This document shows positions 1,240-30,941 of a DNA stretch of 64,000 bases, one piece after another. The stretch is from Macrostomum lignano. Its lineage: Eukaryota. Both the position numbers and the translations under genes were made by a program. The stretch lies in assembly GCA_002269645.1 (NCBI GenBank), contig NIVC01003318.1, positions 40,233-104,232 of the forward strand, in the 5' to 3' direction. The notes under the pieces are model-generated. The model was not told the origin of the DNA. It worked only from the letters and a program-made list of their open reading frames with translations, and did not search any database. Positions within the stretch are counted from its first letter, which is position 1. Every line of letters begins with the position of its first letter.

Positions 1240-1464
1240 GTAAAATAATTCTGAGAACGTCGCTGCAGAAAAACGAATGAATATCCGCTACTACAAACTG
1301 CAGTCAATAAAATAGTTCGTATGTGGAGAGTGCATTTCCATTTAGCATTTGGCTGTCTAGTCTATAAAAGCCTCATCTGCTTAATTGACTGAAGGCCTAC
1401 GCATCAATAAAGTACTTTCTGTAGACTGCGAGCAAAGCAAATAGATAAGCTCGTATTTTAGTTC

Positions 1465-1490
1465 TTTTTATTTTCTACTATGGCTTTATT
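1465..1490 (-). promoter_or_regulatory. Candidate polyadenylation signals (AATAAA) for the minus-strand GIY-YIG/hairpin transcript
   Basis: TTTATT at 1485-1490 and within ~1465-1471 on the plus strand, about 160-180 nt downstream of the paralog stop at 1646. The region is AT-rich, so chance matches are possible. Confidence 0.35.
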
Positions 1491-1645
1491 GGTGACAAAA
1501 GACTTTAATAGAATTTCTTGAAGTAGACAGAACCCTGCAACTAAACTAATAAATTAGTTACAATTATAATTACTAGTAGAAAGTTCCCATGCAAACATAT
1601 GATAAGTTTTATAGTAGGAGAATAATCTAACTTAGCATAGCAGTC

Positions 1646-2158
1646 TCAATCGCAGGTGACATTGGCGTTACGCGCCTGAGGCTGTGACTGCGGACGCTGA
1701 GCCATCGCCTCATGCAGCGCTGGCAGCGTCTGCCAGTCAATGAGCAGAGACAGATTGGCACCACCTGGCCACAGAGCGTCGAGCTGCAGCACCAACCTAT
1801 TGTACAGCTCGGCCGCGAGCAGCTGGTCAGGCTCGGGATGCAATTCAAACAGCCATTCGTCTGCTGTGCTTAGCAAAAGCATTGCGGCAGTAGCGCAGTC
1901 CAGGCACCCTGAACTAGCATTGTCACAATTCTCGTCAGATGGAAATCCGTCCAGCGATCGGTGAAGAAGGCAGCGAAATTCTGCGAGTACATCGTCGCAC
2001 GGACGACTGACGCAGCGCCAACAACGTCTGGACCTGTCGTGACGAGTTGGTAGTACAATCGATAAACTATTTATAAGCCAGGGACCACTCAACACTCGGG
2101 ACGGGAAACGACAATATTTGGAGGCCGATCTATCAATAACTTAGTCCTCGAAAAGCAT
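1646..2158 (-). pseudogene. Paralog fragment of the GIY-YIG-like domain of the 432-aa ORF; no in-frame ATG
   Basis: FRCLLHRSLDGF...ATAAMLLLSTADEWLFEL...LYNRLVLQLDALWPGGANLSL aligns with LRRLLWLAFDGL...VSAAILLTRQTDWQLTL...LQNELTLRLGCLWPRGLNSSL. The only in-frame ATG (2158) is followed by TAA after 5 codons; the ORF-track start is GTG. Confidence 0.6.
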
Positions 2159-2406
2159 CGCTTGGATTAGGTTTTTACCACAGCCACTAACCCGCTGACT
2201 ACAAGGTAGAACATATCGAAGTAATGCTTTTCGAGGACTAAGTTATTAATAGATCGGCCTCCAAATACTGTCGCTTCCCGTCCCGAGCATTGAGTAGTCC
2301 CTGGCTTATAAATAGTTTATCGATTGTACTACCAACTCGTCACGACAGGTCCAGACGCTGCCGGCGCCACGCCAGTCGTCCGTGCGACGATGTACTCGCA
2401 GAATTT
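1976..2406 (-). ncRNA. Long inverted repeat / candidate hairpin RNA (183-bp arms, 65-nt loop)
   Basis: Arms 1976-2158 and 2224-2406 aligned by hand: 171/183 identical, no indels. All 12 mismatches form G:U pairs in the minus-strand RNA. Confidence 0.72.
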
Positions 2407-3638
2407 GTACTCGCGGCAGTCTGCAGCTGGGAATAGTTGCTCATGTCATTACAACCGCTTTCCGGCTTGCTCATTTCCGACTGTAGAATTCTCGCCAGGG
2501 TATTGGCCAGGCAATCCAAGTTTGCTACAGAGTCGTCAAAAAATTCCAGCCCACCGGTCTCCGAGCGCCACCAGCCACTATGTTGTCGCACGTCTCGTCG
2601 GTACTTCAGTCTTTCTTTGGTTTGCGGCTTTGCGGCCAACTCAGCGGCCATGGCATGGAGGCGATGGCAAGCGTCGTAGTCAGCCTGATGTAACTCGCTG
2701 CTACGCTGTCGCAGCTGCTGGCAAAGCCGGCTAAACTCGCGAACAGCCTCATCGCACCGGTACAGGCCTGACTCGTCCGCCTCAAAGGCAATCCGACGCA
2801 CGTCGTCAAACTGCAGATCGGCAAGACCCAATCGTCTAGCTTCCATCGCCGTTGCAGCCTCCTCGACAACAGCTAAGTGACTTCGACTCGCGCCGTTCTC
2901 TGTGGATCGGCACCAGTCAAGCTCCCGTAGCTCCTTCAAACAGACAAGGCTCTGATTCAGACTCGAGTTCAGACCACGAGGCCATAGGCAACCTAGACGA
3001 AGCGTCAGTTCATTCTGCAAAGTCTGTCGCTCCGCCTCAGAGTCGTCAGCTGCCACGAGAGTCAGCTGCCAGTCGGTCTGACGAGTCAACAGAATCGCTG
3101 CACTGACCACTGCATCAGATTCGTCAAGTCGTCTTTGATCGCTACTCGGGCTCTCAAGTCCGTCGAAAGCCAGCCAGAGGAGACGCCGCAGCGCCTCAAT
3201 AAGTTGGTTCGCGTCGCGACCGACGTAGGCAAATGCCGGCAGCCGAGCATGACGCAAAGCGAAAACACCCGGTCCGTGAAGGCGTCGCTTTGCCTCCGTA
3301 GCCGCTTCCGATAGTCCGGCCGAATCAAGAGCCGATCGAATCAACGTGCGCTCCAGATTGGCATCGGCTATCTTGGCCTCGGACGGACGGCCCCACCAGC
3401 CCGAGCGCTGGCGAATCGCCTTGGCGAACGCACGCCTTTCGTCAGTCGGCGTCTGATTTAGCGCTGACGTATGTAGCTGCGCCACCCGGACGAGATTGCG
3501 CCAATCGTCCTGCTGGAATTGCTGCAAAGGTTTGCCACTTTGGATTCGCTTCTCCAGCTGGTTGTAGACCTCCTGAATGCCCGGTTCCAGGGCTGCCGTG
3601 CCTGGAACCAATAGGGCCTTGTTCGTTGATTCGTTCAT
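2340..3638 (-). CDS. 432-aa orphan protein with a degenerate Penelope-like GIY-YIG endonuclease domain between two repeated helical RQxSGWW domains
   Basis: Long ATG-initiated GC-rich ORF. GVF(124-126)...YVG(138-140)...R204xxxQ208...LxxLWPRGLN(215-224) matches the GIY...YIG...RxxxE..WI..L.T..P.GLN pattern of Penelope-element endonucleases. Internal repeat AIRQRSGWW / DVRQHSGWW. Confidence 0.78.
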   Translation of the reverse strand: MNESTNKALLVPGTAALEPGIQEVYNQLEKRIQSGKPLQQFQQDDWRNLVRVAQLHTSALNQTPTDERRAFAKAIRQRSGWWGRPSEAKIADANLERTLIRSALDSAGLSEAATEAKRRLHGPGVFALRHARLPAFAYVGRDANQLIEALRRLLWLAFDGLESPSSDQRRLDESDAVVSAAILLTRQTDWQLTLVAADDSEAERQTLQNELTLRLGCLWPRGLNSSLNQSLVCLKELRELDWCRSTENGASRSHLAVVEEAATAMEARRLGLADLQFDDVRRIAFEADESGLYRCDEAVREFSRLCQQLRQRSSELHQADYDACHRLHAMAAELAAKPQTKERLKYRRDVRQHSGWWRSETGGLEFFDDSVANLDCLANTLARILQSEMSKPESGCNDMSNYSQLQTAASTNSASTSSHGRLAWRRQRLDLS

Positions 3639-5409
3639 AGTCTCCGTAGCTATAAGTAAGTAACGAGTAAAATTGAAGCTCTAGAGCAAGGCTAAGTGAA
3701 ATGGAACAGGTCTGAGAAATCTTAATTAATAAACTCTGTGAGTTTGGGCTTTAAAGCCAATTCTCTCTTTTCATTTAGCGAACCTAATGCTCCTCTTATG
3801 CTGGTCTATTGTGCCTTGCTTACTAAAGACTTTTCTCTCCTTCCTTTGCCTCCACTCCTCATCTCTCTCTCCGACAGCTTTCTCTCCATTATAGTGTCTG
3901 CTTTCATCGATTTGCTCTGACGCACAGACGGTTTCTGTCAGCAGCAAGATGTGCGGAATAATATAGTACCTGTCTTTCCTATACCAGTCTCCGGCCCAGG
4001 TTCTTATAATAGCCGACTGGAAAAACAAGTTAAAGTTAGCATAGAGTATAACAGACTAGTTGGAACACTATTATGCACTGGCATGAAAACATTCTTTACT
4101 CGGAAGCGCAACGTCGCCCAGTCGCCGTTACTTTAAATATAGCAGAACGAAAACAAAAACTCCAAATAAAAGTACTCTAAAGACTCAATTTCAACTGTAA
4201 TGCAAAGTTTTTCCTAAAACTATAATTTATAAATATGCGAATAGATGTATACATAACTGACGGGTCGGCTCACAAATACGGTTTCATCATTTCATTATGA
4301 AGGGTCAACATTTTTATTGCATCAGAGATGCATCGGAGTCAGTTGTTTGTCGATTAGTTGTCAGTAAATTTTGTGGTCGATTTGCAGTTTGAGCTAATCT
4401 GATTGTGCTTGTCGAGCGCCGTTCGTCACCATTGCCTTTTATTTGTGGAATTATTAGTTATAGTTTAGTAATTATTATTACTGTGCCTCTGCCAAATTAT
4501 TGTTTGGCTTTTATTGTAACTAGTGGTAGTCGTTGTTAGTTGTGGTTAGTCGGTCTCGAAAGAGGCCGTTCGGGTTACAAATTATACTTACCATTGCAAC
4601 CTAATTTAACCGAATTTAATTTAACCTAATTTAACCTAATATGCTGCTAGATACTGACAAGCAAGTATATTCAAAGCAAAATTTAAACAGCGCTTTCTAT
4701 TTGAACTTCAGCGTATTTTGGAAGCGACAAGTCAAAGAACAGAACCATCGCAAAAAGATGCTGTGAAAATTTAAAAAGGAAAAGAAAAGACTTTATTTGA
4801 GGGAATAACCTGGGAAATGACGATTTCATAACTCGTACAAACTTAATGCTCTCATATGGAAGCGCGGTAGCCGATTAAACGATTTGAAGACACGTTATTG
4901 AAAACATACAGTCAAGTTATTATGCCCTGTTGCTGGTCTTTCAATGTTCAAGCGATTAGCACGTAGTGGCTCTTTTTAGTACTAATAGTAATCTTTCAAG
5001 AGTAATCGCTTGGCCACTGTTGGGTCAGGCAATCATGGAATTTTTTTTTAGTTCGGCAGCTCTTTTTGCTTCAAAGTCGGCGCCCTCTGCTGCAGAAACT
5101 GCTTCTGTCAATATTGGCAATTGCCTATCAGCTGTTGAATCATTAATGCACAGATTTCTTTATAAGCTGTTGGCTGCCTACTGAAAGCTGCAATCTTGAG
5201 GCTGCATGCAGAATACCGGAGCAAACTGTTGTTGCGTTTCTCTATTAATAGGAGTTATAAGTAGATGCACTTTGATCCAACGCGGCGCAGGGAGGTGCGA
5301 TAAAAGTCAGCCCTGATAGTCGATATGGTTAGTCGAACGGCCCAGTATTTGAGTTGGGGTTTTACTGTTTCCTAATGCTCAAAACTTTTTGGTCTATTCA
5401 GTAGGTTTA

Positions 5410-6474: not shown

Positions 6475-6695
<221 letters not shown>

Positions 6696-7403
6696 AACTT
6701 TAAAGTTCAGTATGTGACACTGTTTATTTATCTTTAAGTACAGAAAAATCGAGCAACGTTGTTCTTCTAGTAGAGCCATTGGTCACTGAACAAGAACTAA
6801 CCATTAGCAAGCAGCTCAATGCCTATTTGACTGCTTACTGTCCTTAATCCCTTTGCTGAAGCAGTATTTTAAATTGTACTTTTTTATATTGGTTTAATAA
6901 ATTCTGTTAGAATAAAAAATTAGGCAATTCTTCCCTCACATTTTGTTCTAAAAGTATAAATTTGCTTCCATATTTTACAGATAACTTACGGGCACTTTCC
7001 AAAAACTAAAAAATGACATTACCTTCTTTAAAAAAATCGTAACCTATTTTTTAACCCGTAAAAATCGTTGTGCCTATCCATGAAATAGTTGATTTTGCAT
7101 CGATTTAAAACCTACATCTATTATCGATTTTATTCAACCTACGACGCAATTTCCTATTCAGTTTAATGCCATTCCTTTAAATAAAACAATTCGAGGGTCG
7201 AATATTTTGGCAAAAATAGTTTTACAGTGAGTTCAAACGCTTTAATTTCCAACGTCCAATCAAAAGCGACGAGACAGACATGGCGCAATAGGCTTCGTAC
7301 CGAGGCTATTATGTGGGTATCTGTATTTATAAGAGTTGCCAGCAGCATCTCAAGAGCGCACTCCAAGTTAGGCGGAAAATTGAAGGAAAGGAATTTCTTA
7401 GAA

Positions 7404-8615
7404 ATGTCACTGAAAGTCGCGAACGACTCTGAGTCGGAATCGTCCGTTTGCGAGGCCTATTGTCAGGCGAATACAATTTTGTGGAGCGTTCTGCTTCCGC
7501 CACTCTTAGCCGTTGGCCTGATAGGCAACTTGCTCATTGTGCTTGTGTTCAGTACTAGTACCAAACGACGGCGAAGGAAGCCGGTCCTCTGCATCACCAT
7601 GGTGACGCTGGCCTGCGCCGATCTGCTCGTGTTCCTGTTCCCCATCACGCGGCACTGGCTGAGACACGCCAAGCTCTACATCAGCTTTGACGTGCAAACT
7701 TTGGGCACAGGTGTCTGCAAGACGCACGAGTTTCTCGTCTACTTCTCGTTGATGTTCAGCATCTGGATGGTGGTGCTGGTGTCCGGAGAGAGATTCACCA
7801 TCATCTGTTTCCCCTTGCGTCGATCGCGACTCCTGACGCCGCGTCGAATCGTCGCTGTGATTGTTGCTATCATAACTGTCTCTGCACTGCTCAATGTGCA
7901 TTTCTTTTGGACTCGCGAATTCGTCTGGAACCACCAACTGAACCGAATGAGCTGTCAGAATGCGCGTTCGGGTCTGGACGCGTTCATTTCTAAATCGGTT
8001 CACCCCTTCGTAGACATGACCTTCACCGCTGGGCTGCCCCTCCTGCTATTGGTCATCTTCACTGGGGCGATCGCGCACAGACTTTACCAAAGAAGTCGCC
8101 AGCTTAAAACTCTGACAGCCGGGCTCAGCAACTGCTCGCCAGCTGGACGGCAGCATCGCCTGCTCACGCCAACCACGCGAATGGTGCTGCCTGTGCCGCT
8201 GTTGTTCATCCCGCTGGCGATGCCCGTGAAGTTCTGGCTAGTTGTGCACCACGGCAAGGGCATTCCGGGCTCCGTCCAGCCGGGCACGCCCGAGTACCAC
8301 AGTGTCCGGCTGGGCTGGTCCGGCCTTCTGTTCCTGCAGTTCTGCAACTTCGCCTGCAACTTCTTTATTTACAGTCTGATGTCCGCCGACTTTCGCGCCG
8401 ACTTGGCCAGACTTTTGTGCGGCCGGTGCCGTCGCCGGGTCTGGTGTCGCCGGGGTGAGCAGTCGGCCTCGACCAGATCGGCGCCGCCAACCGCAGCCGC
8501 AGCAGTAGACGCCGCCGATGTCGTTGTGAACGACAGGAAGATGGTGCTAGCAAGCAACTTTGATGACGCGAGCTCGGTCTACCAGATGCAGCTCCGGTCT
8601 TGCAGACGATGTTAA
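7404..8615 (+). CDS. Intronless rhodopsin-class (class A) GPCR, peptide/orphan receptor-like, ~403 aa
   Basis: Seven hydrophobic segments: TM1 GLIGN, TM2 LACADL, Cys at the top of TM3, ERF at the DRY position followed by ICFPL, Cys in ECL2, TM7 NFFIY, helix 8 FRADL. Likely start is ATG 7404, in frame with the ORF opened at 7227. Confidence 0.9.
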   Translation: MSLKVANDSESESSVCEAYCQANTILWSVLLPPLLAVGLIGNLLIVLVFSTSTKRRRRKPVLCITMVTLACADLLVFLFPITRHWLRHAKLYISFDVQTLGTGVCKTHEFLVYFSLMFSIWMVVLVSGERFTIICFPLRRSRLLTPRRIVAVIVAIITVSALLNVHFFWTREFVWNHQLNRMSCQNARSGLDAFISKSVHPFVDMTFTAGLPLLLLVIFTGAIAHRLYQRSRQLKTLTAGLSNCSPAGRQHRLLTPTTRMVLPVPLLFIPLAMPVKFWLVVHHGKGIPGSVQPGTPEYHSVRLGWSGLLFLQFCNFACNFFIYSLMSADFRADLARLLCGRCRRRVWCRRGEQSASTRSAPPTAAAAVDAADVVVNDRKMVLASNFDDASSVYQMQLRSCRRC

Positions 8616-9679
8616 ACTTCAGTAAAAAGAATTGAGAGACATTACGAAAGTCAAATATTTTTTATAAATAATATTTACCTGTACAATAAGATTTGTTTTC
8701 GTCTAGTCGGATTATGAACTCAAGTATGATTGGATCTTATTTACTGTTACATGTAATGTCTTATACATTTGTTGAATTATATTATCCGGAGTTAATCTAA
8801 ACACCATCAGATCCACAAGCTAATTTTAACATAAATTTTGCCCCATCCTGCACACCTTTCTACGCAGTAGAGATTAATTACCAGAAAATTCACTAGATAT
8901 TTGTGTTGCCATATACCAGTGCAAATACGAGCAGCAAATAAATTACAAAAAAAAAATTAATTCCATTCTGAGTGTGATATTAAAATTTCGTTCCGTAGAC
9001 ACACAAAATTGTTAAAGCATGCAGTTTGGGTGCATGCAGTTCACTGTACTGACTGAATTTATATGCGTTTCCATGTGCACAACACTGTCGCATGTTTGAA
9101 TATTAAAGCTCTCCCTCTGATTCATAGAACTCACTCCGTTGTCTTGTTCAGGTGGAAATGTCCCTGCCGGAGTCTCACGGAGAGCTGCTAAGCTCAACAA
9201 TTATACAATTATTAATGCTGAATTAGCGTACTTTGTGTTGTCTAATTCACTAATAAAGTGGTATTTCTCCCGCTATCTAACCTATGCCCCGTTTAACTGA
9301 GTCCGGTGAGATGAAGAGAAACTGCTGGATGCCAGTTTTATTCACACTGAATTTGTCTATGGCAAAACCAAGGTGTACTCAAGTAGAAGGACGGAAAAGT
9401 ACGGTTCTTGGAAAATTTTAAAAGGCAGGTTTTACCAAAGAAATACATTACGGAGATTGGACTTGGAGCTGGTTTTCATTTTTCCAGCAAAAAAATGTTA
9501 TTGCTTTTGATAGAAGGGAGGCACAATTTTCATCTTTTGATATGCCTTGCCTTTCTTATAGACTTATTGATATTCATAAAGTTTTTCGTTACGTTTTTTT
9601 AAATTTTTCAAGAATTCAGTTTCTCCTTCTACTCGAGTAGCCCTTGAGTGAAACTCCATCCAGCGCCAGGTATCAAAGG

Positions 9680-9940
9680 ATCGAGATTAGGAGTTAGGGT
9701 TAAGTCGTGGCTTAAAGAGAGGATTTAATACCAAAGCTCCAAGCTGGAATACTGATATCCTAGGCTAGATAGCTGGCTTTCGAGGTGAATGCTTTTTGCT
9801 TTAAACACATCAGGTTCTTTCAGAAACTAACAATATCTAACAATATTCAGTGATTGTACAAGGTCAAAATATGGATTTAGTTTATTCTAGCAAGTTGCTT
9901 CTCTCTTTGTTGCCTCCCATCGGGGGGCGCAGATCGCTAG
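9680..9940 (+). mobile_element. 3' part of a Helitron related to the 41503-43821 element
   Basis: GCCTCCCATCGGGGGGC hairpin followed by CTAG|T (9937-9941), nearly the same as the terminus at 43790-43822. Degenerate TTAGGG at ~9686-9700. 5' end not found. Confidence 0.55.
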
Positions 9941-10559
9941 TTCAATGACAACAAACTGAAAACTTTCTAGCTCGCCAAGAACAGTCTCAAGCAAATATTT
10001 TAGCACGGATTGCACGCCTAGCGTACTTCTACTTTAGTTGACCACGAAAACAGAAATGTTGTGAGGTTTACTAAAACTACAACTGCACTCAGGGGTATTG
10101 TGAACTTATTCGCATTGAGCTCTCCAACTAATAGTAATCGTAGGTTACGCAATCGGCAGCTTGAGTGTGGAGCAAAATGCCAGTTGCGAGCGTGCAAACT
10201 GATACAAACAATTTTGGCGTCAGTGGTATACTATTTGTTCGATAAAACTTCTGCAAAAGTAATAAAAAAAGTGTTGCAACCGTACACTATCTATAATCGC
10301 TATTATCAGTAGTCATGTTTTGCTGACCAGATATTTCTGTAAAGTTTGATGGCGGTGTATAGAGGCTTGTTCCCGAGAAATGCTGCGACTGTACGAAAAA
10401 GAATATGTACAATGATGGCAGTGTGAAGGAGTGCAAAAGTTGTGCCGCGCGAAAGGGAATGGTTAATCAGTAATTTCTAAAAGCACTACTTACAGTAATG
10501 TTCAGAATGCGTCGTCGTACGCAAATGAAAAATTTGTATAAGCAGTAGCTTTTTATTAT

Positions 10560-10906
10560 TACTCGTAGAATCAGGGGTTTGTGTGCACTCTGGTACACTT
10601 TAAACGACATTGTTATTACCAATTCCGCCGACTCCCCTGAGCAGGCGCACAAGCGCGCGGATACGTACGCAGTCATACGCACAGGCACACACTCACACAG
10701 GAGTGTACAGCGGCCCTAACTTTATTTATCGTTAGGCATGTACACTTCACTGTGCCTTGGGGCTCGGCCCTCAATCGCATTAATCCCACGAGCAGAGCCA
10801 AGCCGAGATTCCAATTCAGCCCCAAATTAATGTGGACTGCACTTGGAATCGAGCCTGGGCCGCTGGTACATCAGAGCGTCGCGCCAGACCACTGAGTCCC
10901 TGCCCC
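10560..10906 (-). mobile_element. tRNA-derived SINE family B copy
   Basis: A/B-box head (CAGTGGTCTGG...GGCTCGATTCC). The body aligns with the copies at 17223, 28843 and 60330. Confidence 0.85.
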
Positions 10907-11733: not shown

Positions 11734-14700
11734 ATGAGCTCTGGTAACAACAGGGTGTCACCGGCGATGGCAGCTGTGAACCAGGCGTTGGTGCCAGACA
11801 ATGACAACGAGCTGGTGGCGTCGGCGCGGCCCCAGCCGGGACGTGCGATACCCAACGCGCCGGAGTACGGATCGCCCGAGCACTTGAGACGTGTCCCCGA
11901 GCCGTTGAAACAGCAGCAGCAGCAGCAGCAGGTCACCCTGTCGGAGAACCTGCCAGTTCAGATGGTGCGATTCCTGCGCTCAACCGAAGACGGCGGCGCG
12001 GACGATCAAGGCGTCGGCGTCAACATTGGGAAGTCGCGAGTTAACCAGGTGGTCACCTTCCAGGAGATGATTGAGGTAAAAACACTTTTTTCAAATTAAT
12101 GTCTTCATGCACAGACAGTTTAATTTTGACGAACGAAAACTATAAAAAGTTGCAATAAAGGCACAATCCCGCGAACTTTCTGTTAGAGAGCGTCAAAGAT
12201 GACCGAGTTAAAAGCATAGGTAAAAAATTAAACTCCTCTAAAAACTAAATGAAGAGGCAACCAAACTCGATGAATGAGAACAGAGGTCAAATTCTGCTAC
12301 GTCTTGGACGTCACATCGATCGGCCTAGAAGATGATTTGGGGAATCCACCAAAACGCATCTTGCCCTCCAAGTTGTTTTATATCTGAGGGTCCTGACGTT
12401 TTCTTCTGATACAAAACTCTTGTCTTTATTAGAGAAAAAAGATGTGACAGCTGCCTTTATTAAGCTACGTTTACATCCATATATTCTCATGGGTCGGTGT
12501 TCTGGCTTAGAATGTTTGCTAAGTAAGGCGCAGCAAAACAATACCAGCTCATGACGAACCACACAGGCAGCGAAAGAAGGCCGAACCAAAGACCTGGACG
12601 AACTGATGGGTCCGTCAGTTCCAACGGGCCCAACCGGCGTGATCAAGGTGCGCAAGAACATCCCAATCGACAAGCGCGACTCCGAAGGCTACAGCATGCT
12701 GCACTATGCGGCCAGGAACAACCACAGCGATGTTTGCGAGCTTCTTATCAAACGAGGCGCTGACGTGAACGTAGAAGGGCCGGATCAGATGACGCCGCTG
12801 CACCTGGCTGCCAAATATCGAAGGTCGCGGTCCAAAGCGGCGATTACTGTGAGTTTGGTGAAGGCCAACTGATAAATAGACCATTCTGGATCTTTGCTCT
12901 TGTTTTTTATTCATTTTAGAGGTCTATGAATTGCATTGACGCTTTTATCTACCAGGCGATTAAAACAATCTACCCAGGAGCTACCACTATCGACCCTCAT
13001 ATATTTATCAACGTTTACTCTCATGTAATTACCAATTTCCTACCCTAGAGTTAACACTGTCTACCCTAGAGTTAACACTGTCTACCCTAGAGTTACCACT
13101 GCACTGTCTACCCTAGAGTTACCACTGCACTGTCTACCCTAGAGTTACCACTGTCTACCCTAGAGTTACCACTGCACTGTCTACCCCAGAGTTACCACTG
13201 TCTACCCCAGAGTTACCACTGCACTGTCTACCCTAGAGTTACCACTGCACTGTCTACCCTAGAGTTACCACTGCACTGTCTACCCTAGAGTTACCACTGC
13301 ACTGTCTACCCTAGAGTTACCACTGCACTGTCTACCCTAGAGTTACCACTGCACTGTCTACCCTAGAGTTACCACTGTCTACCCTAGAGTTACCACTGCA
13401 CTGTCTACCCCAGAGTTACCACTGTCTACCCCAGAGTTACCACTGTCTACCCTAGAGTTACGACTGTCTATCCTAGAGTTATCACTGACTGTCCACAATA
13501 GAGTTACGTTCACCACTGTCTACTCAAGGTTGCTACTTTCCTTGAGTCTCGCCTGCTCCCTGGAACTTTTATTGACTTCGCAGACTACTTCTGGTGACCT
13601 GCTGGTTTTATATAGCTGTCATTGTTATTGTAAATGGTGATTTACAACTACAAGTACAACAAGGACCCGCCAAAAGCATTAAAGTTTGCAAGATTTGAGC
13701 AGCATTTAGATGCACACTAAAGCACTGGCTGTCTAAACAATGAAATGCCAAACCTCCGGAAACCTGGCCCCAGCAGCAAGCATGTCCACCGTTTGGCATT
13801 TTCTATTCCCAATTCCAGCTGTGTGTACCTTGCTGTTTCCATAGCAACCCTCGTGAGGTTTTAGAGCCTGCAGCAGCAGAAGCTTAATAATATTGCAAAC
13901 TGTCTCCCCCCTCTCGCTCTCGCTCTCGCCCTCACCCTCGCTCAACTGCCCCTGTCTCTTCTCCATTTGCTTACTGAGAAAACATTGACATTAGCAGAGA
14001 ATATTGGCAATAAAAAAATCAGTCTGTTCACGCTAGGAGCGCTGCTACTGAGTAGGACTAGCTATGCCAACCAGTAGTGAACTTTTTGACAGTAAAGAAT
14101 ATGCACTAATAGGCGCATAAGTGTCTCGTTGAATCCAAACGCAATCGGCCTTTCATTCACCTAGAAACTAACAAAGAAGGCGCGGTGTATTTTGTTGCCT
14201 TTGATGTCAACTAACTAGCTTGGGATGCTGACTGTGTGGGTAGGGCGTATGATGGAGAGTTAGAGCGAACAGATATCTCAAGTCCCAGCCAATCACTACA
14301 CGGCACACTTGACAAGGTGGAGGGTACAGTGGACATGTGTCAGCCAATCAGCGGTCACTTCAATATTGTACTACAGAATTGTACGTTCTGTAGGTGGGTG
14401 GGTGTCCGAAGTGGAACTTTCTCATTGGCTGGCAGATCTCACTACTTCTCAGTCTCTCCATGGATGCCCGACAGATCTTGTGTCACTTTTCTCGATTCTA
14501 GCTATAACGCGTCACGGGAGATCAATATAACTAGGGAAAGACTACCAAATGACATTAAATTTACTTAAATTATTTCGCCTAATAAAATAAATAGAAACTG
14601 AAGCAATCTGGAAGTGCAGACGCTGTGACAGCCGCCGCTGACATTGGCACCGCCGGCAAAGGCGGAGCTTTTACAAATTTGCCGCCCATTCATAACGTGT

Positions 14701-17700
14701 CACTGCGAGGCAGAGCTCGCACAGCTGTGAGAAATGCTTGGATGAAATTGAAGCTTTTTTCCTCTCCTACTGACCTGTTTTTGAGTCGGATTTCATCTTG
14801 GATTTCTTTTCTCTATCTAGATTTGAATTTTCAACAATTAAAAAATGATATCGAGAATTTCAACTAGAGGCCTTGATATTCGTTGAAAGACCCGATGAGA
14901 GACCCGATGATGGATCCCATGATGGACCCGATGATGGAACCAATGAGAGACCCGATGAGAGATCCCATGATGGACCCGATGATGGAACCAATGAGAGACC
15001 CGATGAGAGATCCCATGATGGACCCGATGATAGAACCAATGAGAGACCCGATGAGAGATCCCATGATGGACCCGATGATGGAACCAATGAGAGACCCGAT
15101 GAGAGATCCCATGATGGACCCGATGATGGAACCAATGAGAGACCCGATGAGAGACCCGATGATGGATCCCATGATGGACCCGATGATGGAACCAATGAGA
15201 GACCCGATGAGAGATCCCATGATGGACCCGATGATGGAACCAATGAGAGACCCGATGAGAGATCCCATGATGGACCCGATGATGGAACCAATGAGAGACC
15301 CGATGAGAGACCGATGAGAGACCCGATGAGAGACCGATGAGAGACCCGATGAGAGACCCGGTGAGAGACCCGATGAGAGACCCGATGAGAGACCGATGAG
15401 AGACCGATGAGAGAACCGATGAGAGACCGATGAGAGACCCGATGAGAGACCCGATGAGAGACCGATGAGAGACCGATGAGAGAACCGATGAGAGACCCGA
15501 TGAGAGACCGATGAGAGACCCGATGAGGGACCCGATGAGAGAACCGATGAGAGACCCGATGAGAGACCCGATGAGAGACCCGATGAGAGACCGATGAGAG
15601 ACCCGATGAGAGACCCGATGAGAGACCCGATGAGAGAACCGATGATGCACCCGATGATGGACCCTTGGGAAATGGACCCGATTACGAGTATGGACCCGAT
15701 GAGAGACCCGATGACAGACCCGATGAGGGAAATGATGACAGACCCCAGAAAAATACTAAAAGCCAGCAATTGGCCTATATACATGAATGGGTTTGGGTCA
15801 TCGTTATATAAAATTTGTCGGATAAATTTCCACAGTCAATAGAAGGATATTTAGCTCGTAATAAATTTGTTGCCTTTTCTTGGGTGCTTTTCACTATCTA
15901 TTCATTCATTCTTCGACTTTTTTACGTATCTATAACAATTTGAAAGTTTTTTTGGACACGAGAAAACTGTACAAAACTTTAACAGACGTCAATTGACAGG
16001 GATGATGAGGTATCTGAATCAAATTTGAATTATCTTGCAGTATAAAAATTAATAACTCTGTTAACTCTACATACTAAGGTGTAACTATATTCGATGTGCT
16101 TCTCTTAATGTACTGTTGTGAAAACTGTCAATCAACCTTCAAATTTTAATTACTGTGCTTCAACTCTAAGAAAACGTACAACCTACAGGCAAATGCACAG
16201 AAAGAACTTTACTTTAACTATTTTACTTGTTAATTGAAGGTTAAATATTTGGTTCATCATTAAAACAAAAACTTCACACTCAACAGCGTACGAGACAGGC
16301 TGAGGCATCGACCAATGCAAAACTGGTATAAAGTCAATTTACAATTTTATGCTATGTCTACCTGTAAGCTTTTGTTGTAGTTGTTTGGACGTTTTTTGTT
16401 ATACCGCGATGACCTTTTGTGACGATCAACTAAAATGTAACCGGCTTTTGACTGGCTCTGCTGCAATGTATTGATACTAAAATAACTAAATTGATTCTTT
16501 ATTTAGCCCATCCTAACTATTTGAATCCGTGAGCAGAACAAGGTCCAATGTTCAGCAGTTGAAAAAAATACAAGCAATACAAAATACAGTCCAGTTTAGA
16601 CCTAAAATACCGTTTTATAAAGTTTTTGTTGTTGTTTGTATGATTAACAATTATTGTTGCTTACGAATCCCTTGAGTTGTAAACTTTAATGCGTTCGACT
16701 TGTGCCCCCGCTTTGCTGATAGGCAAAGTACTTGCAGTTTATCACATATTTTTAATTCTATAGTTTTTTGTTCACGCAGTCGCTTTGTACAATGTTGAAC
16801 TGCTGCTTTTTAAAGCTTACAAAGCCTACTCTCCTTACCTTGTCGTTTTAGAAGAATGAAGACGAGTCGGAGAGTCTTGCGTTGAAGCCGCAGGTAAGCT
16901 GAGTCGATGTCTTCTGTTTTGGTTGAACCCGATTTCACTGCTTGATGTCTTTTGTTTCCTCAAAAGTCGATACGATGCACTTATAATCCATCGTTAATTG
17001 ACTTGATCTGAACGTGAATTATATTCTTTACCGATTTTCCTTTAAAGTTTTTCCTAGATGTTACTTTATGTAATAGCTGTCGTTAATTTACTGATATACA
17101 GGCATATGGCAGAGAGACACTAAGATAATAAAGCAGAGCGACCGACAGACTTAAAGACACACAGACAGACAGACACTTTAAGATAATAAGACAGAGAGAC
17201 CGACAGATCCAAACCTAAGACGAGGGCCGTAGTACAGTGGTCCAGCGCGGCGCTCTGGTGTGCCAGCAGCCCAGGTTCGATTCCAAGTGCAGTCACATTA
17301 ATTTGAGGCTAAATTGGAATCTTGGCTTGGCTCTTCTCGTGCAATTAACAGCCTTGAGAGCCAACCCCCCAAGGCACAGTGAGGTGTACATGCCTAACGA
17401 TTAATCAAGTTAGGGCCGCTGTACACTCCTGTGTGAGTGTGTGCCTGTGCGTATGACTGCGTACGTATCCGCGCGCTTGTGTGCCTGCTCAGGGGAGTCG
17501 GCAGAATGGGCAGCAATGCCTCTCGCCGGTTATGTGACAATGTCGCTTAAAGTGCACCTGAGTGCACACAGCCCCTGTCTCTAATCGAAAAGATTCAAAG
17601 ACAGACAGACAGACATAAGACACGTAGACAGAAAGACAAGACCGATAGATACAATATATGTGAATGGATGTATAACGCATAACGCATAACGCATATATAC

Positions 17701-20700
17701 ATCAACATGTTGCCTGATTACAATGCCCGATGACCTGCTACTACATGTAAAAAGCTTCTTTGCTAGCTTCTCTTCCACACTATCCATAATATTCAATTAC
17801 CTTTGCAAACATCTACTGTTCCATTTGCCAGTATTTAGCAGTTTTGGAATCGAACGCCGAATACGATTCCGATAGCGATGTAAGTGCTCCGATCCCAGTG
17901 TAGCGAATTTTTAATAACTCTTTGAGGTCATTCATGCGCTATTTCGAGCCGTAGTGATGCTCATCCTCCGGCTTCTATGTTTCGTGTGTATTCAAAACAC
18001 GGAAGTAAAGTAAACAAAAATTCGCCTGACACATGGTAACTGTTACATATAATCACACTGCCTCGAGCAATTTCGTTTAAATATGCTTATCTTAAATTTG
18101 CGGTATTGAAATGAATAAACTATCTATTGTCTTGATATTGCATGGTATCTCTCAACATGATAACACTAACGGCTATGGCTACTTTTAGGATATTGCACTC
18201 TTAGTTGCAAAGGAACGCGTTAAAAATTAGTGGAAAAGTTTAACAGCATTATGATTAGGTGCACGATAAAATCCAAAAAATGGTGCTTTTCATGATCAAA
18301 AACTGATTTTGCTGTTTAAGCTTCGGTGTCAGCCTTTGATAAAGTCGGTAATAAAGTTAATGCACGGATCATTTTTAAGTTAATGTGAAACTTTGCCAAA
18401 CTGTTGCTGTATCTAGCTGGGCCCTACTTTTCATCGTAGGACGAACGGGACGCGGTCTACATCCTGCTGAGACATGGAGCCGATTTTACTCAAAAAGATT
18501 TCTACGGTTGCACACCTTTGCACTACGCCGCTATGAAGGGCAACCTCGTGGCCAGCAGGTGCCTATTGCACTTTGAGTCGATGCGACAGAAAGGACGAGT
18601 GATCAGCGCCGACAGGGTGGAATGCGTCTACAGCACTCGAGTGCCCATCTGGAGGGTGAGCGCGTTTCATATGCGACCAAATCTTCCCATAGTTTTTTCC
18701 GGAGTTTCCCCCAGGAACTGTAAAAACTACCTAGCACACCGAGTACAATGACAAAATCTTAGTTGACTATAAGGTCTCATCGACCTTTTCCACGGCGTCA
18801 AATAAAGCGACGATGAAATGGAACCCGGGGGTAAAGCTTCGGACTACATTCGGGTCCCTCTCTCGGGCTCCCTCCCTGGCTTCTGGTCGACAGCTCTAAG
18901 TAGCGGTTTGGTCGGGTCGGTTGTTAACATCTCAAAATGCCCAAAAGTGAATTGTACTTTCGTTTTTACTGCTTGTCGAATAGGTTTTTTCTACTTAGCT
19001 TGGACCACACCTGTGACCTTGGACGTCACACGTTTAATGCTTTAGAACGTAGATATCATTGTACGAACCACATCCTAATCTTGATAATATTTTGCAGGCG
19101 ATCTCCTATAGACTTTTTCTAATATGTGACTTGAACATCCTAATACTAAAACTGACGCGATGTTTGTCTGTGTGTGTGTGTGTTGCAATCTTAATACTAA
19201 AGTTGGTGCGTTGTTTGTTTGTTTGTTTGTCTGTTTGTTTGTAGGATATCTCCTCCTAGACTACGTGCAACTCAGCGTTGAAACTTATATGGGAATACTG
19301 CAAATTTTCCGGAATCGGCTTTAGGCTGTTTTAATCTTTCATTTTTTAATTTTAAGATCCCTAAAAAAGCAGAAATCTGATTTCCTAACCTTCTCTGGAC
19401 ACTTTTTCTGCTCGGAGCTGAAAATTGGCATAAATTTTGAGTGATTACGCCACAACTTTTTCCTATGTCGCCAGTGCATTTTCTCTCCTGTGGGGGAATG
19501 GGCGCGTTCTCATTGGCGGCGTGTGTACAATCGGACCCTGGCTCACTGGCTGACTTTATAGACAATTGCGCAACTATTTGTGTTCTGTTTTTTAACAGGA
19601 AGCCCTGTGTATTTTTTGCACAGTGAAATTCAGTGCATTTTAATGCATAAACTCGCGAGCATCTTTAGCAGGCAGTGAAGGTACACTCGATATTTCAATG
19701 CTTAAAATCAGAAAGTTTCAAACGCTAACTGTTGCTCGATTTTTTAACTTTGAGAGACGAGACTTTTATTGCTGGAAAGAGCTTGCAGCGCTGAGTTCGG
19801 GGATATAAGTTTTTTGCTTTAAATATGAAAATTAAATTCACAGCATTCAAGAAAAGATTTTCATACTTTTAGCTTTCTGCAAAGATTGTTCTCATTTTGG
19901 AGTTCAATGGGGGTTCGACCGACCCCCCAATAGTTGGTGGGGGGGTTCAATTTCTAGCTGCACTGCGTATTGGAAGGGGGGTCGGTTGCTGTGTATTGGA
20001 GGGTTGATTTAGATTGCGCAATCTTTGTGTTAACTTTAACTGAGGCTGATACTGACTGCCTGAGAAATAAGTTGCGCAATTTAATTGGTTCAATGTTTTT
20101 ACGGCGCCGTTCAACACGCAGCTGTGTGTAGCTCTAACCCTAACCCTAACCCTAACCAATGAATTCTGAGAGCTGGGCTGTTTGACGTAGAAATTTCGAT
20201 TTAGTCCAGTTTCACGGAGAGGATTTCTATTTCGCGGAGAATATTTCGATGGTGTTCAGTTTCACGGAGAGGATTTCGATAGTGTTCAGTTTCACGGAGA
20301 CGATTTCTGTTGCGCGGAGAGGTGTTGGAAAATGGGATTCCGCTGATGGAGTTCAGGGAATGGAATTCCGCTGATTGGAGTTCTTCCCCTTTCTTCTCCG
20401 AAGGAGGAGTTGGCCTCGTTAATACTAAAACTGGTGCGTTGTTTGTCTGTGTGTGTGTGTGTTTGTTGGATAACTCCTCCTAGAATACTTGCAAGTCAGC
20501 GTTGAAACTTATATGGGAAAACTGCAAATTTACCGAGGATGGCTTTAGGCTATTTTAATCTTTCATTTTCAATTTTTAAGATCCCTAAAAAAGCAGAAAA
20601 TAGCGGTCTTGACCTTTGATAATCTTAATTGTCCCCTCTTTCTGCTTGGAGCTGAAAATTTGCATCAATTTTAGTGATTGCGCCATAAAATTTTTCTATC

Positions 20701-29700: not shown

Positions 29701-30941
29701 CGGTGAAAACCAAGCTGAAAGAGTTGAAGTCAAAAACTGCAAAGATCGAAGCAATGCTAGGGGTAAGTTTGGAATTTTTATTTTACAAGACTAAGGGTAG
29801 TCTAAAGCTTCCGGTTTAAAACACACGCAAGTCACCCACCCCACAGCACCCACTGTCCATAGAAGTTACCCACCCCACAGCACCCACTGTCCATAGAAGT
29901 CACCCACCCCACAGCACCCACTGGTCACCCACCCCACAGCACCTACTGCCCATGTAGAAGTCACCCACCCCTCAGTACCCACTGCCCATAGAAGTCACCC
30001 ACCCCACAGCACCCACTGCCCATAGAAGTCACCCACCCCACAGCACCCACTGCCCATGTAGAAGTCACCCACCCCACAGCACCCACTGCCCATAGAAGTC
30101 ACCCACCCCACAGCACCCACTGCCCATCTAGAAGTCACCCACCCCACAGCACCCACTGCCCATGTAGAAGTCACCCACCCCACAGCACCCACTGCCCATA
30201 TAGAAGTCACCCACCCCACAGCACCCACTGCCCATGTAGAAGTCACCCACCCCACAGCACCCACTGAATTCACCCACCCCACAGCACCCACTGCCCATAG
30301 AAGTCACCCACCCCACAGCACTCACTGAAGTCACCCACCCCACAGCACCCACTGAAGTCACCCACCCCTCAGCACTCACTGCCCATAGAAGTCACCCACC
30401 CCACAGCACCCACTGCCCATGTAGAGTCACCCACCCCACAGCACCCACTGCCCATGTAGAAGTCACCCACCCCACAGCACCCACTGCCCATAGAATTCAC
30501 CCACCCCACAGCACCCACTGAAGTCACCCACCCCTCAGCACTCACTGCCCATAGAAGTCACCCACCCCACAGCACTCACTGCCCATAGAAGTCACCCACC
30601 CCTCAGCACTCACTGCCCATAGAAGTCACCCACCCCTCAGCACTCACTGCCCATAGAAGTCACCCACCCCACAGCACCCACTACCCATAGTCACTTACTT
30701 CACAGTACTCACTGTCCATAAAAATTACCCAACCCATAGAAAGCTCTAACCATGGAAAGAATTTAAACATTTAATCTCAACTGAGCAAGAAACTCCAACC
30801 CTAACAAACTTCGACCTTATGCAGGCGATAATGCGCAAGCTCCAGATAGACCAGGACGAGTCCTCGCTAAACTACGTGGACGCTGAGGACAATTGCACGG
30901 ATGAACACGTCCCCGCTGTCGGGAATGAGATCGTGACTTAA
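11734..30941 (+). CDS. TRPA1: TRPA1-like ankyrin-repeat transient receptor potential channel, 13 exons, ~1347 aa
   Basis: Phase-consistent GT-AG exons: 11734-12075, 12567-12848, 16852-16893, 18440-18655, 24181-24502, 24585-25064, 25497-25942, 26208-26776, 26860-27181, 27281-27412, 28156-28629, 29463-29762, 30825-30941. Many TPLHxAA ankyrin repeats, LLKHPLV..LL..KW pre-S1, pore MMIGEFEY, S6/TRP-like NLLVGLAVDDIKAVQEQASLNRMAMQVEL, C-terminal coiled coil. Confidence 0.93.
13040..13478. repeat. Minisatellite, 26/21-bp units (CTACCCTAGAGTTACCACT[GCACT]GT), TRPA1 intron 2
   Basis: Direct tandem repeats with two length variants differing by GCACT. Confidence 0.95.
14884..15745. repeat. Hierarchical minisatellite: 48-bp units built of 12-bp GAGAGACCCGAT-like subunits, decaying to 11-13-bp units
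   Basis: Visible tandem structure. It explains the MRDP, HRVS and GSLI ORFs in several frames. Confidence 0.95.
17223..17585 (+). mobile_element. tRNA-derived SINE family B copy
   Basis: GGGCCGTAGTACAGTGGTCCAGCGCGG...GGTTCGATTCC head. Homologous to the other three copies. Confidence 0.85.
19138..24153 (+). mobile_element. Head-to-tail array of three non-autonomous Helitron units in TRPA1 intron 4
   Basis: Starts A|TCCTAATACTAAAA. Units end in a CTCC(T/C)CC-GAA-GGAGGAG hairpin + CTCG|T at 20418, 21644 and 24153. Each has a (GT/GTTT) microsatellite, a (TAACCC)n tract and ~30-bp internal repeats. Overall A|...|T target. Confidence 0.78.
22870..23995. repeat. Purine-rich (GA)-type low-complexity tract inside Helitron unit 3
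   Basis: About 1.1 kb of mostly G/A on the plus strand. Confidence 0.92.
27690..27980 (-). mobile_element. tRNA-derived SINE family A copy, TRPA1 intron 10
   Basis: Reverse complement of the copy at 56402-56690, with B box GGTTCGATTCTC. Confidence 0.82.
28843..29210 (+). mobile_element. tRNA-derived SINE family B copy, TRPA1 intron 11
   Basis: Aligns throughout with the copy at 17223. Confidence 0.85.
29830..30715. repeat. Minisatellite, 34/36-bp units (GAAGTCACCCACCCCACAGCACCCACTGCCCAT[GT]A), TRPA1 intron 12
   Basis: Direct tandem repeats with shorter deletion variants. Confidence 0.95.

What the first reader, a model, noticed from the sequence alone, without database searches (positions are those of the whole stretch)
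1976..2406. 183-bp hairpin in which all 12 arm mismatches are G:U wobbles on one strand
Hand alignment of arm 1976-2158 (minus) with arm 2224-2406 (plus) gives 12 substitutions and no indels. In every case the left arm has G or T where the right arm has A or C. On the minus-strand RNA (the strand of the adjacent 432-aa gene) all 12 are G:U pairs, so the stem stays fully paired; on the plus strand all would be A:C mismatches. Random transitions would share one polarity with probability 2x0.5^12 (~1/2000). G:U-rich, strand-polarised long stems are the known signature of hairpin-RNA/endo-siRNA loci such as the Drosophila hpRNAs. Inference: this is a transcribed dsRNA module at the 3' end of a protein-coding transcript.
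Basis: partly seen in the sequence, partly recalled or inferred. Interest (0 to 1): 0.88.

Follow-up and report, generated by a model that had tools for sequence, protein, structure and literature searches.

The report
RNA-editing footprint on a flatworm hairpin
A real 183-bp inverted repeat inside one copy of a flatworm (Macrostomum lignano) orphan gene differs between its arms only by twelve A-to-G changes on the transcribed strand. This is the mark of ADAR editing of double-stranded RNA, and it most likely entered the "genome" because this assembly was polished with RNA-seq reads.

Summary
Arms 1976-2158 and 2224-2406 pair without indels. All 12 mismatches are A:C on the plus strand and G:U on the minus strand.

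The window is Macrostomum lignano contig NIVC01003318.1 (assembly Mlig_3_7). The hairpin lies inside orphan gene BOX15_Mlig022171g1, where two other genomic copies carry a normal GT-AG intron with only a decayed arm of about 90-100 nt. In this copy an inverted copy of the intron's 3' end plus the first 58 nt of exon 2 replaced the 5' splice site.

Using the other copies and the partner arm as outgroups, 7 mismatches are directly polarised and 5 are inferred. All are A-to-G on the sense strand, in both arms. Reverting them gives a perfect 183-bp palindrome. The changes are about ten times denser than background, with no C-to-T and no transversions. Selection for wobble pairs cannot produce that. 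ADAR hyper-editing can.

The assembly paper states that Pilon polishing used RNA-seq reads. Best reading: a perfect DNA palindrome is transcribed on the minus strand and edited, and the edits were written into the consensus. The hpRNA/siRNA reading is untested. The explanation "G:U maintained by selection" is not supported.

The parts
2224..2406 (-). 5' arm of the hairpin (transcript sense). The distal ~98 nt (2309-2406) exist only in this gene copy. Positions 2349-2406 are antisense to the first 58 nt of exon 2.
2159..2223 (-). Apical part: a 47-nt loop (2168-2214) flanked by 9 imperfect pairs. Its mismatches (U:G, A:C, C:C) are shared with the other gene copies and are therefore ancestral.
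1976..2158 (-). 3' arm of the hairpin. Positions 2034-2158 are the 3' end of the ancestral intron. Positions 1976-2033 are the start of exon 2 (SRRCWRCVSRPCDDVLAEF).
2358..2372 (-). Cluster of five sense-strand G (2372, 2368, 2362, 2361, 2358) inferred to be A-to-G, because the partner base is U in all three gene copies. The sixth site of the cluster is on the opposite arm (2013). The G at 2368 turns TAG into TGG in the exon-1 frame, so the ORF is 432 aa instead of 423.
2268..2288 (-). Three sense-strand G (2288, 2274, 2268) in the 5' arm. They are A in both arms of L002 and L003 and in the window's partner arm.
2013..2134 (-). Four sense-strand G (2013, 2086, 2093, 2134) in the 3' arm. They are A in L002 and L003, and the partner base in the window is U.
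2392..2414 (-). Rearrangement junction. Identity to the other copies ends after ...ACTGCCG (2414). A 7-nt filler CGAGTAC (2413-2407) follows, then the arm. GCGAGTAC occurs twice, 15 nt apart (2414-2407 and 2399-2392). This looks like a template-switch or microhomology joint.
   Evidence: read from the sequence
2412..3638 (-). Coding block 1 (exon 1) of BOX15_Mlig022171g1. The open frame continues into the 5' arm and stops at 2340-2342.
1646..2033 (-). Coding block 2 (exon 2). The 3' splice site conserved in the other copies (CGACAG|GTCC, AG at 2035-2034) is buried in the stem.
1981..2410 (-). Only a candidate: a cryptic GT...AG intron of 430 nt that would remove the whole hairpin and restore the frame. 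A 415-nt variant from the duplicated donor at 2395 does the same. There is no evidence that either is used.

Best explanation
The proposed mechanism has three steps.

1. DNA (inferred). In one of at least three genomic copies of a Macrostomum-specific orphan gene, a pre-existing intronic inverted repeat with arms of about 90-100 nt was extended. The likely cause is a replication template switch or fold-back event. The 5' arm was re-synthesised as an exact inverted copy of the 3' arm and its flank. That flank comprises the intron's 3' end and the first 58 nt of exon 2. The event replaced the last 22 nt of exon 1, the 5' splice site and about 285 nt of intron. The result was a perfect 183-bp palindrome.

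2. RNA (strongly inferred). The gene is transcribed from the minus strand. Without its normal splice donor the hairpin is probably retained in the transcript. The 183-bp duplex is deaminated by an ADAR enzyme, and the inosines are read as G. This gives A-to-G changes on the sense strand in both arms, including a cluster of six within 15 bp.

3. Assembly (method documented; its effect at this locus inferred). Mlig_3_7 was polished with Pilon using Illumina DNA reads together with RNA-seq reads. At the 12 most heavily edited adenosines the RNA reads outvoted the DNA reads, and G was written into the consensus.

On this reading the strand-polarised G:U wobbles are an RNA-editing footprint in an RNA-polished assembly. 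They are not genomic substitutions kept by selection.
For: - Identity of the locus: the encoded protein matches only M. lignano proteins, and L001 is 100% identical to the window.
- Copies L002 and L003 share a canonical intron (CACAG|GTAGAA ... CGACAG|GTCC) with a 307-310-nt AT-rich segment in place of the distal 5' arm.
- Polarisation: at 2013, 2086, 2093, 2134, 2268, 2274 and 2288 both other copies and the partner arm support A. Only the window arm has G. At the five remaining sites the partner is U in all three copies.
- Reverting the 12 G to A gives 183 of 183 Watson-Crick pairs.
- 12 of 99 sense-strand A are changed, against 0 of 99 antisense A (Fisher p = 3e-4).
- Background differences between the window and L002=L003 outside the hairpin number 41 in about 9.7 kb. 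Seventeen are transversions and only 4 are of this type. The expected count in the arms is 0.15 against 12 observed (Poisson about 2e-19). Even with only the 7 directly polarised sites the probability is 3e-10.
- The 5' neighbours of the changed A are U6, A4, C1 and G1. Among all arm A they are U30, A25, G27 and C17. G is depleted, as for ADAR (p = 0.06).
- No window-specific change of this type occurs elsewhere in the gene.
- Wudarski et al. 2017 state that the assembly 'was polished with Pilon v. [quoted passage not shown]
- ADAR1 and ADAR2 with intact active sites exist in planarian flatworms (PMC8797187).
Against: - No raw DNA or RNA reads and no second assembly of this copy could be reached. 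The 432-aa ORF is absent from the protein collection, and the clusters hold only Mlig_3_7 and UniProt models. Step 3 is therefore not shown.
- Five of the 12 sites lack an outgroup for their own arm. If the long palindrome were old, they could be C-to-T changes in the 3' arm instead.
- An ADAR gene was not demonstrated in M. lignano here.
- The neighbour preference is only marginally significant.
- Pilon would need RNA coverage well above DNA coverage at these sites. That is plausible for a retained hairpin but unknown.
- The palindrome itself has not been verified independently of the assembly.
Confidence: 0.6

Rival explanations
1. The 12 differences are real genomic transitions in an hpRNA/endo-siRNA locus. 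Only changes that keep the minus-strand RNA stem paired (G:U) were tolerated by selection.
For: - All mismatches are G:U on the gene strand, and the stem is uninterrupted in the minus-strand RNA.
- The distal 58 nt of the 5' arm are antisense to exon 2 of this gene and of its other copies. siRNAs from it would therefore have targets.
- M. lignano has Dicer, Argonaute and amplification genes.
Against: - Selection can only filter mutations. It cannot raise the density about 10-fold over the flanks.
- It would admit C-to-T as readily as A-to-G, yet all 7 directly polarised changes, and probably all 12, are A-to-G.
- The palindrome is otherwise perfect, so it is too young to have collected 12 substitutions.
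- The homologous shorter stem in L002 and L003 decays by 4 transversions and 2 indels, which shows no constraint on pairing.
Confidence: 0.1
2. The G are really in the DNA and derive from ADAR editing. An edited hairpin transcript was reverse-transcribed and copied back into the locus by cDNA-templated repair or gene conversion, or the edits were otherwise hard-wired.
For: - The same ADAR-type signature applies.
- M. lignano carries transcriptionally active LTR retrotransposons as a possible source of reverse transcriptase (titles and abstracts listed).
- The rearranged structure shows that the locus has undergone unusual repair.
Against: - It requires a rare RNA-to-DNA event exactly here.
- A documented and much simpler route exists for RNA bases to enter this particular assembly.
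- No poly(A) tract, target-site duplication or intron loss typical of retro-copies is present. The flanks are collinear with the other copies.
Confidence: 0.08
3. A DNA-level, strand-asymmetric mutation process acted on the palindrome. Candidates are transcription-coupled adenine damage on the non-template strand, hairpin extrusion, a RIP- or APOBEC-like deaminase, or GC-biased conversion between the arms.
For: The changes are strand-coordinated and clustered, six of them within 15 bp next to a rearrangement junction. This superficially resembles the mutation clusters seen at breakpoints.
Against: - The polarised direction is A-to-G, not C-to-T. This rules out cytosine deaminases, RIP and spontaneous deamination of single-stranded DNA.
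- GC-biased conversion would give both A-to-G and T-to-C on one strand. The observed counts are 12 and 0.
- Transcription-coupled damage should affect the whole transcribed gene. No such change lies outside the arms.
- From general knowledge, ADAR acting on R-loop DNA would hit the template strand, which is the opposite polarity.
Confidence: 0.05
4. The long palindrome itself is an assembly artefact, for example from a PacBio missed-adapter read or Pilon local reassembly with fold-back cDNA reads. On this view neither the stem nor its mismatches exist in the genome.
For: - The long form is present in only one of three copies.
- Fold-back cDNA synthesis at the pre-existing shorter hairpin would generate exactly this geometry.
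- The assembly was polished with RNA-seq reads.
Against: - The structure is in the middle of a 104-kb contig and is joined cleanly to exon 1 through a 7-nt filler. A simple fold-back artefact would not produce that joint.
- An artefactual copy would not by itself carry independent A-to-G changes on both arms.
Confidence: 0.1

Closest known systems
ADAR hyper-edited long inverted-repeat dsRNA (such as inverted Alu pairs in human transcripts, or edited hairpins in C. elegans and Drosophila UTRs and introns)
   Same: - The substrate is a long, near-perfect intramolecular duplex in a pol II transcript.
- Many A-to-G changes occur only on the transcribed strand.
- The changes are on both arms and clustered, and G is depleted 5' of the edited A.
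   Different: - Here the changes are seen in a genome assembly rather than in RNA-versus-DNA comparisons.
- The organism is a macrostomid flatworm in which editing has not been described.
- The duplex is built from the gene's own intron/exon-2 junction, not from repeat elements.
Drosophila hpRNA / endo-siRNA loci (hp-CG4068, hp-CG18854, Nmy/Tmy)
   Same: - The locus is an inverted duplication of part of a protein-coding gene.
- One arm is antisense to an exon of the parent gene family.
- It arose recently in one lineage or copy.
   Different: - There is no small-RNA evidence.
- The stem shows no sign of conservation or of selection on pairing.
- The hairpin lies inside the parent gene and disrupts its splicing, rather than forming a separate locus.
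Template-switch (quasi-palindrome to palindrome) mutations / fold-back inverted duplications
   Same: - A short imperfect inverted repeat was converted into a longer perfect one.
- One flank was replaced by the inverted copy of the other.
- There is a filler and microhomology at the return junction.
   Different: - The event is larger than typical short template switches, at about 183 nt re-copied.
- The mechanism is inferred from end-state sequences only.
Consensus errors introduced by polishing a genome assembly with transcript reads
   Same: The assembly method is documented as Pilon with DNA plus RNA-seq reads. The changed bases are exactly those expected from an RNA modification.
   Different: I found no published report of ADAR edits imprinted in an assembly in this way (one search returned only organelle-editing papers). 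The effect at this locus is inferred, not shown.

Membership tests
ADAR hyper-editing substrate | Long (more than about 50 bp) near-perfect intramolecular RNA duplex | tested here: met
   The minus-strand RNA forms a 183-bp uninterrupted stem of -392.6 kcal/mol.
ADAR hyper-editing substrate | Differences from the unedited sequence are exclusively A-to-G on the transcribed strand, on both arms, and clustered | tested here: met
   Seven sites are polarised by two other copies plus the partner arm, and five are inferred. Twelve of 99 sense A are changed against 0 of 99 antisense A. Six lie within 15 bp. Reverting them gives a perfect palindrome.
ADAR hyper-editing substrate | 5'-neighbour preference (U and A over C, with G least favoured) | tested here: inconclusive
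   Edited sites have U6, A4, C1 and G1 as 5' neighbours. All arm A have U30, A25, G27 and C17. Fisher p = 0.06.
ADAR hyper-editing substrate | G in RNA but A in genomic DNA; dependence on ADAR | not testable with these tools
   No reads or independent assembly were reachable. ADARs are known in planarians. None was shown here for M. lignano.
hpRNA / endo-siRNA locus | Transcribed long inverted repeat with an arm antisense to a target gene | tested here: met
   Positions 2349-2406 are antisense to the first 58 nt of exon 2 of this gene and of L002 and L003. Transcription is inferred only.
hpRNA / endo-siRNA locus | Dicer/Argonaute-dependent siRNAs of about 21-22 nt from both arms | not testable with these tools
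   No small-RNA data were available. The pathway genes exist in M. lignano.
hpRNA / endo-siRNA locus | Stem maintained by selection (pairing-preserving or compensatory changes across copies) | tested here: not met
   In L002 and L003 the 5' arm carries 4 transversions and 2 indels that break pairs. The window changes are too dense and of one type only.
MITE / foldback transposon / introner element | Multiple dispersed copies with terminal inverted repeats and target-site duplication | tested here: not met
   The arms occur only at this locus and its homologous positions, within the 64 kb plus two 21-kb loci examined. There is no target-site duplication. The distal arm is exon sequence. The sample of the genome is small.
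microRNA / mirtron precursor | Match to a curated family, or a short (~60-100 nt) hairpin bounded by splice sites | tested here: not met
   Rfam gives only sub-threshold MIR408 hits on both strands (28 and 23 bits against a cut-off of 64). The stem is 183 bp.
RIP / cytosine-deaminase hypermutation of repeats | C-to-T (G-to-A) direction of change | tested here: not met
   The polarised direction is A-to-G.

The most novel reading that the evidence does not exclude
The twelve G are truly in the DNA. An ADAR-edited hairpin transcript was copied back into its own locus by cDNA-templated repair or conversion, giving germline hard-wiring of A-to-I edits. The newborn hairpin would then act as an hpRNA whose exon-2-antisense arm silences the other copies of the gene left by the recent whole-genome duplication.
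Probability: 0.07. Interest if true: 0.85.

Novelty: new member of a known kind. Interest (0 to 1): 0.42.

Why it matters
- If the best explanation holds, this is indirect evidence for ADAR hyper-editing of a long endogenous dsRNA in Macrostomum lignano. No paper in the searched library mentions RNA editing or ADAR in connection with this species in a relevant way.
- It is also a concrete warning. The widely used Mlig_3_7 reference was polished with RNA-seq reads and may carry RNA-level changes in its consensus wherever transcripts are heavily edited. That would hide editing sites in RNA-versus-genome comparisons and create false genomic variants.
- Independently of the editing question, the locus shows a fresh palindrome-extension event. 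It removed a splice donor in one copy of a duplicated gene and created a 183-bp hairpin with an exon-antisense arm. This is the kind of raw material from which hpRNA loci are thought to arise.
- If the G are genomic instead, the case would be much more unusual (see the novel reading).

Tried and rejected
- Pfam on the two coding blocks gave nothing above cut-off. The gene is an orphan, with homologues only in M. lignano.
- Rfam on 1400-3800 gave only sub-threshold, two-stranded MIR408 hits, which reflect a generic hairpin.
- Transposon or MITE reading: there are no further copies of the arm in the window or the related loci, and no target-site duplication.
- I first took the hairpin for a bona fide intron. 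A canonical GT-AG pair at 2410/1981 (430 nt) restores the frame, but many other GT/AG pairs also do.
- The NCBI model P0001 joins QLQTA|DRSRRCW at non-canonical boundaries. It lacks exactly the 18 nt (GVFVLR) present in the other copies. It is evidently a transcript of another copy projected onto this one, so it says nothing about how this copy is spliced.
- I sought independent sequence of this copy. The exact 432-aa ORF is not in the 15-billion-protein collection. The two clusters hold only Mlig_3_7 and UniProt models of the other copies. No reads or alternative assembly were reachable.
- Literature searches for ADAR or RNA editing in Macrostomum found nothing relevant, and none reported RNA edits imprinted by RNA-seq polishing.
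- I ran no further search on finding an M. lignano ADAR. Vertebrate hits would swamp the list.
- C-to-T deamination, RIP, GC-biased conversion and transcription-coupled damage were rejected on direction, symmetry and localisation.

Full report
**1. The observation**

The inverted repeat is real in the sequence. The repeat finder gives arms 1976-2167 / 2215-2406, 192 nt, 92% complementary, with a 47-nt spacer. It is the only long inverted repeat in the 64-kb window.

A base-by-base check finds exactly 12 non-Watson-Crick pairs and no indels within 1976-2158 / 2224-2406. All 12 are A:C on the plus strand and therefore G:U on the minus strand. None is a transversion.

As RNA, the minus strand forms an unbroken stem of -392.6 kcal/mol. 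The plus strand gives -352.3 kcal/mol with 12 internal mismatches.

**2. Where the hairpin sits**

The 432-aa ORF (2340-3638, minus) and a second open frame (1646-2095, minus) form one GC-rich block in AT-rich surroundings. A protein search with the joined product hits only two clusters, both Macrostomum lignano hypothetical proteins. P0001 (BOX15_Mlig022171g1) lies on NIVC01003318.1 of assembly GCA_002269645.1 (Mlig_3_7). Its locus L001 is 100% identical to the window.

Two further genomic copies were retrieved:
- L002: NIVC01003802.1, protein P0002.
- L003: NIVC01002546.1, protein P0003.

Their flanks are collinear with the window over about 10-13 kb at 95-99% identity. They are homeologous or allelic copies, as expected for this recently duplicated genome (PMC5730564).

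The gene has no Pfam domain. Differences between copies run at roughly 1 synonymous to 1 non-synonymous. That is compatible with a moderately constrained coding gene.

**3. Anatomy compared with the other copies**

In L002 and L003, exon 1 ends ...ACTGCCGGTGTATTTGTGCTCAGACACAG. A canonical intron follows, GTAGAA...CGACAG (L002 10618-11180). Exon 2 starts GTCCAGACG... and encodes (R)SRRCWRYVSRPCDDVLAEF.

The 3' half of that intron already contains an inverted repeat with the same 47-nt loop. Its 5' arm is only about 90-100 nt long (L002 10903-10999). Relative to its partner it carries four transversions and two 2-nt indels, all shared by L002 and L003.

In the window copy, identity to the others stops after ...ACTGCCG (2414). 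A 7-nt filler CGAGTAC follows. This creates GCGAGTAC twice, 15 nt apart. Then comes a 5' arm that is the exact inverted copy of the whole 3' arm out to position 1976. That is 58 nt into exon 2.

The 307-310-nt AT-rich intron segment of the other copies, the splice donor and the last 22 nt of exon 1 are all missing. They occur nowhere else in the window.

I infer a template-switch or fold-back event that re-synthesised the 5' arm from the 3' arm. The reasons:
- The window's 5' arm lacks all the decay seen in the other copies' 5' arm.
- After correction for the 12 sites (section 4), it is perfectly complementary to its partner.

The opposite order of events is less parsimonious, for the same reason. 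In that scenario the long palindrome would be ancestral and the distal arm later lost in L002 and L003.

The NCBI model P0001 bridges the hairpin with a non-canonical junction. It lacks exactly the 18 nt that only the other copies have. It is a projection of a transcript from another copy and gives no evidence on splicing of this one. Cryptic GT...AG pairs that restore the frame exist, for example 2410/1981 (430 nt), but so do many others.

Without the native donor, the likely product is an unspliced RNA. Its exon-1 frame stops inside the 5' arm, and the hairpin lies 3' of that stop.

**4. What the 12 mismatches are**

The partner arm and the two other copies serve as outgroups.

| Sites | Location | Evidence |
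|---|---|---|
| 2013, 2086, 2093, 2134 | 3' arm | Window arm has G; every other sequence supports an A:U pair |
| 2268, 2274, 2288 | 5' arm | Window arm has G; every other sequence supports an A:U pair |
| 2358, 2361, 2362, 2368, 2372 | copy-specific part of the 5' arm | Pair with U that is identical in all three copies |

The first seven sites are directly polarised. The last five would also be A-to-G if the arm arose as a copy.

All 12 changes are therefore A-to-G on the sense (minus) strand, spread over both arms. Putting A back gives 183 of 183 Watson-Crick pairs. Of 99 sense-strand A in the arms, 12 are changed. Of 99 antisense A, none is changed (p = 3e-4).

Outside the hairpin, the window differs from L002=L003 at 41 sites in about 9.7 kb. 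Seventeen are transversions and only four are of this type. None of those four lies in the gene.

The arms should then hold about 1.5 changes of any kind and 0.15 of this kind. They hold 12 (Poisson about 2e-19). With only the seven directly polarised sites the probability is 3e-10.

The 5' neighbours of the changed A are U6, A4, C1 and G1. G precedes 27 of the 99 arm adenosines, so it is depleted (p = 0.06).

**5. Interpretation**

Selection for a paired stem can only remove mutations. It cannot produce a ten-fold excess. It also has no reason to admit A-to-G while excluding C-to-T, which gives the same wobble pair.

Other DNA-level processes fail as follows:
- Cytosine deamination, RIP and APOBEC-type processes have the wrong direction.
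- GC-biased conversion between the arms would be symmetric on the two strands.
- Transcription-coupled damage would not be confined to the duplex.

A single-type, strand-specific, clustered and duplex-restricted A-to-G pattern on an otherwise perfect hairpin is what ADAR does to long dsRNA. This rests on general knowledge of ADAR. ADAR1 and ADAR2 with intact catalytic motifs are documented in planarian flatworms (PMC8797187).

The remaining question is how an RNA modification appears in a genome sequence. The Methods of the assembly paper answer it plausibly. The Canu assembly 'was polished with Pilon v. [quoted passage not shown] Where RNA coverage exceeds DNA coverage and editing is high, Pilon would call G.

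This also fits the contrast between copies. Only the window copy has a long perfect duplex, and it probably retains that duplex in poly(A)+ RNA. The other copies splice out a short, imperfect one.

I rate the whole three-step account at about 0.6. The ADAR-type origin of the pattern alone I would put nearer 0.8.

**6. Rivals**

| Rival | Confidence |
|---|---|
| Palindrome itself is an assembly artefact | about 0.10 |
| Genuine genomic G from copy-back of an edited transcript | about 0.08 |
| Another DNA-level strand-asymmetric process | about 0.05 |

The evidence for and against each is given in the Rival explanations section. None could be excluded outright, because no raw reads or independent assembly of this copy were reachable. 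The exact ORF is absent from the protein collection, and the clusters contain only the annotated models.

**7. Comparison with known systems**

The locus works like a hyper-edited inverted-repeat dsRNA. It meets the structural and mutational criteria. The RNA-versus-DNA criterion is untestable here.

It resembles a newborn Drosophila-type hpRNA in origin. It is an inverted duplication of part of a gene, with an arm antisense to exon 2 of the gene family. M. lignano has the RNAi machinery (PMC5594548). However, siRNA production is untested and the 'stem kept by selection' criterion is not met.

It is not a MITE or foldback element as far as the available sequence shows. It is not a known RNA family.

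**8. Verdict**

| Question | Verdict |
|---|---|
| Observation | Confirmed |
| Most likely nature | An RNA-editing footprint imprinted in an RNA-polished assembly, on a real and recently extended palindrome that disrupts one copy of an orphan gene |

Interest is moderate. The locus is a useful pointer to ADAR activity in Macrostomum and to a systematic hazard in this reference genome. It is also a clean example of palindrome birth. It is not a new kind of system unless the G prove to be genomic.

Noticed in passing
window 2366-2368 (minus strand codon): The sense-strand G at 2368 converts an in-frame TAG into TGG. This lengthens the exon-1 ORF from 423 to 432 aa (…HGRLT* versus …HGRLAWRRQRLDLS*). 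If the G is an RNA edit, it is a stop-to-Trp recoding of the amber/W type, probably incidental.
   Followed up: partly
L002 10903-10999 and L003 11533-11620: In the two other gene copies the 5' arm of the intronic hairpin carries four transversions and two 2-nt indels relative to its partner. L003 adds further mixed changes in the loop and arms. The shorter hairpin therefore looks unconstrained.
   Followed up: yes
L002 ~9225-10595 (exon 1 of the other copy): The L002 copy has indels in exon 1. The NCBI model P0002 starts late (334 aa), and the UniProt model P0004 has a frameshifted middle section. It is either a decaying copy or a product of assembly indel errors.
   Followed up: partly
window 7227-8615 (+): An intronless rhodopsin-family GPCR ORF (Pfam 7tm_1, E = 3e-20) lies about 3.6 kb from the hairpin gene, divergently oriented. 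A 417-aa model is called next to L002's copy of the gene. At L003 the region aligns at the DNA level, but no gene was called there.
   Followed up: partly
window 43537-43598: An interstitial telomere-like (TTAGGG)n tract of about 10 units.
   Followed up: no
window 6476-6694, 13055-13507, 14884-15745, 29829-30690, 31657-32005, 42115-42674, 46096-46328, 47197-47422, 48694-48934, 49304-50678, 51027-52322, 58318-58543: Unusually many micro- and minisatellite arrays, with periods of 4-102 nt and up to about 70 copies. They coincide with several of the spikes in the GC-skew profile. The 24-mer arrays at 46096 and 47197 are two copies of the same array about 1.1 kb apart.
   Followed up: no
window 17235-17507, 28856-29128, 60413-60682 (reverse): A dispersed repeat of about 275 bp is present three times in the window and once in L002 (1915-2187), at 84-90% identity. 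It is probably a short transposable element or SINE-like sequence.
   Followed up: no
window 20230-20307, 21456-21533, 22640-22827: The same 30-nt tandem unit (TTTCACGGAGAAGATTTCGATAGTGTTCAG) recurs at three places about 1.2 kb apart. This suggests a larger tandem or segmental repeat, next to a purine-rich (AGAGAAG)n tract at 22874-23261.
   Followed up: no
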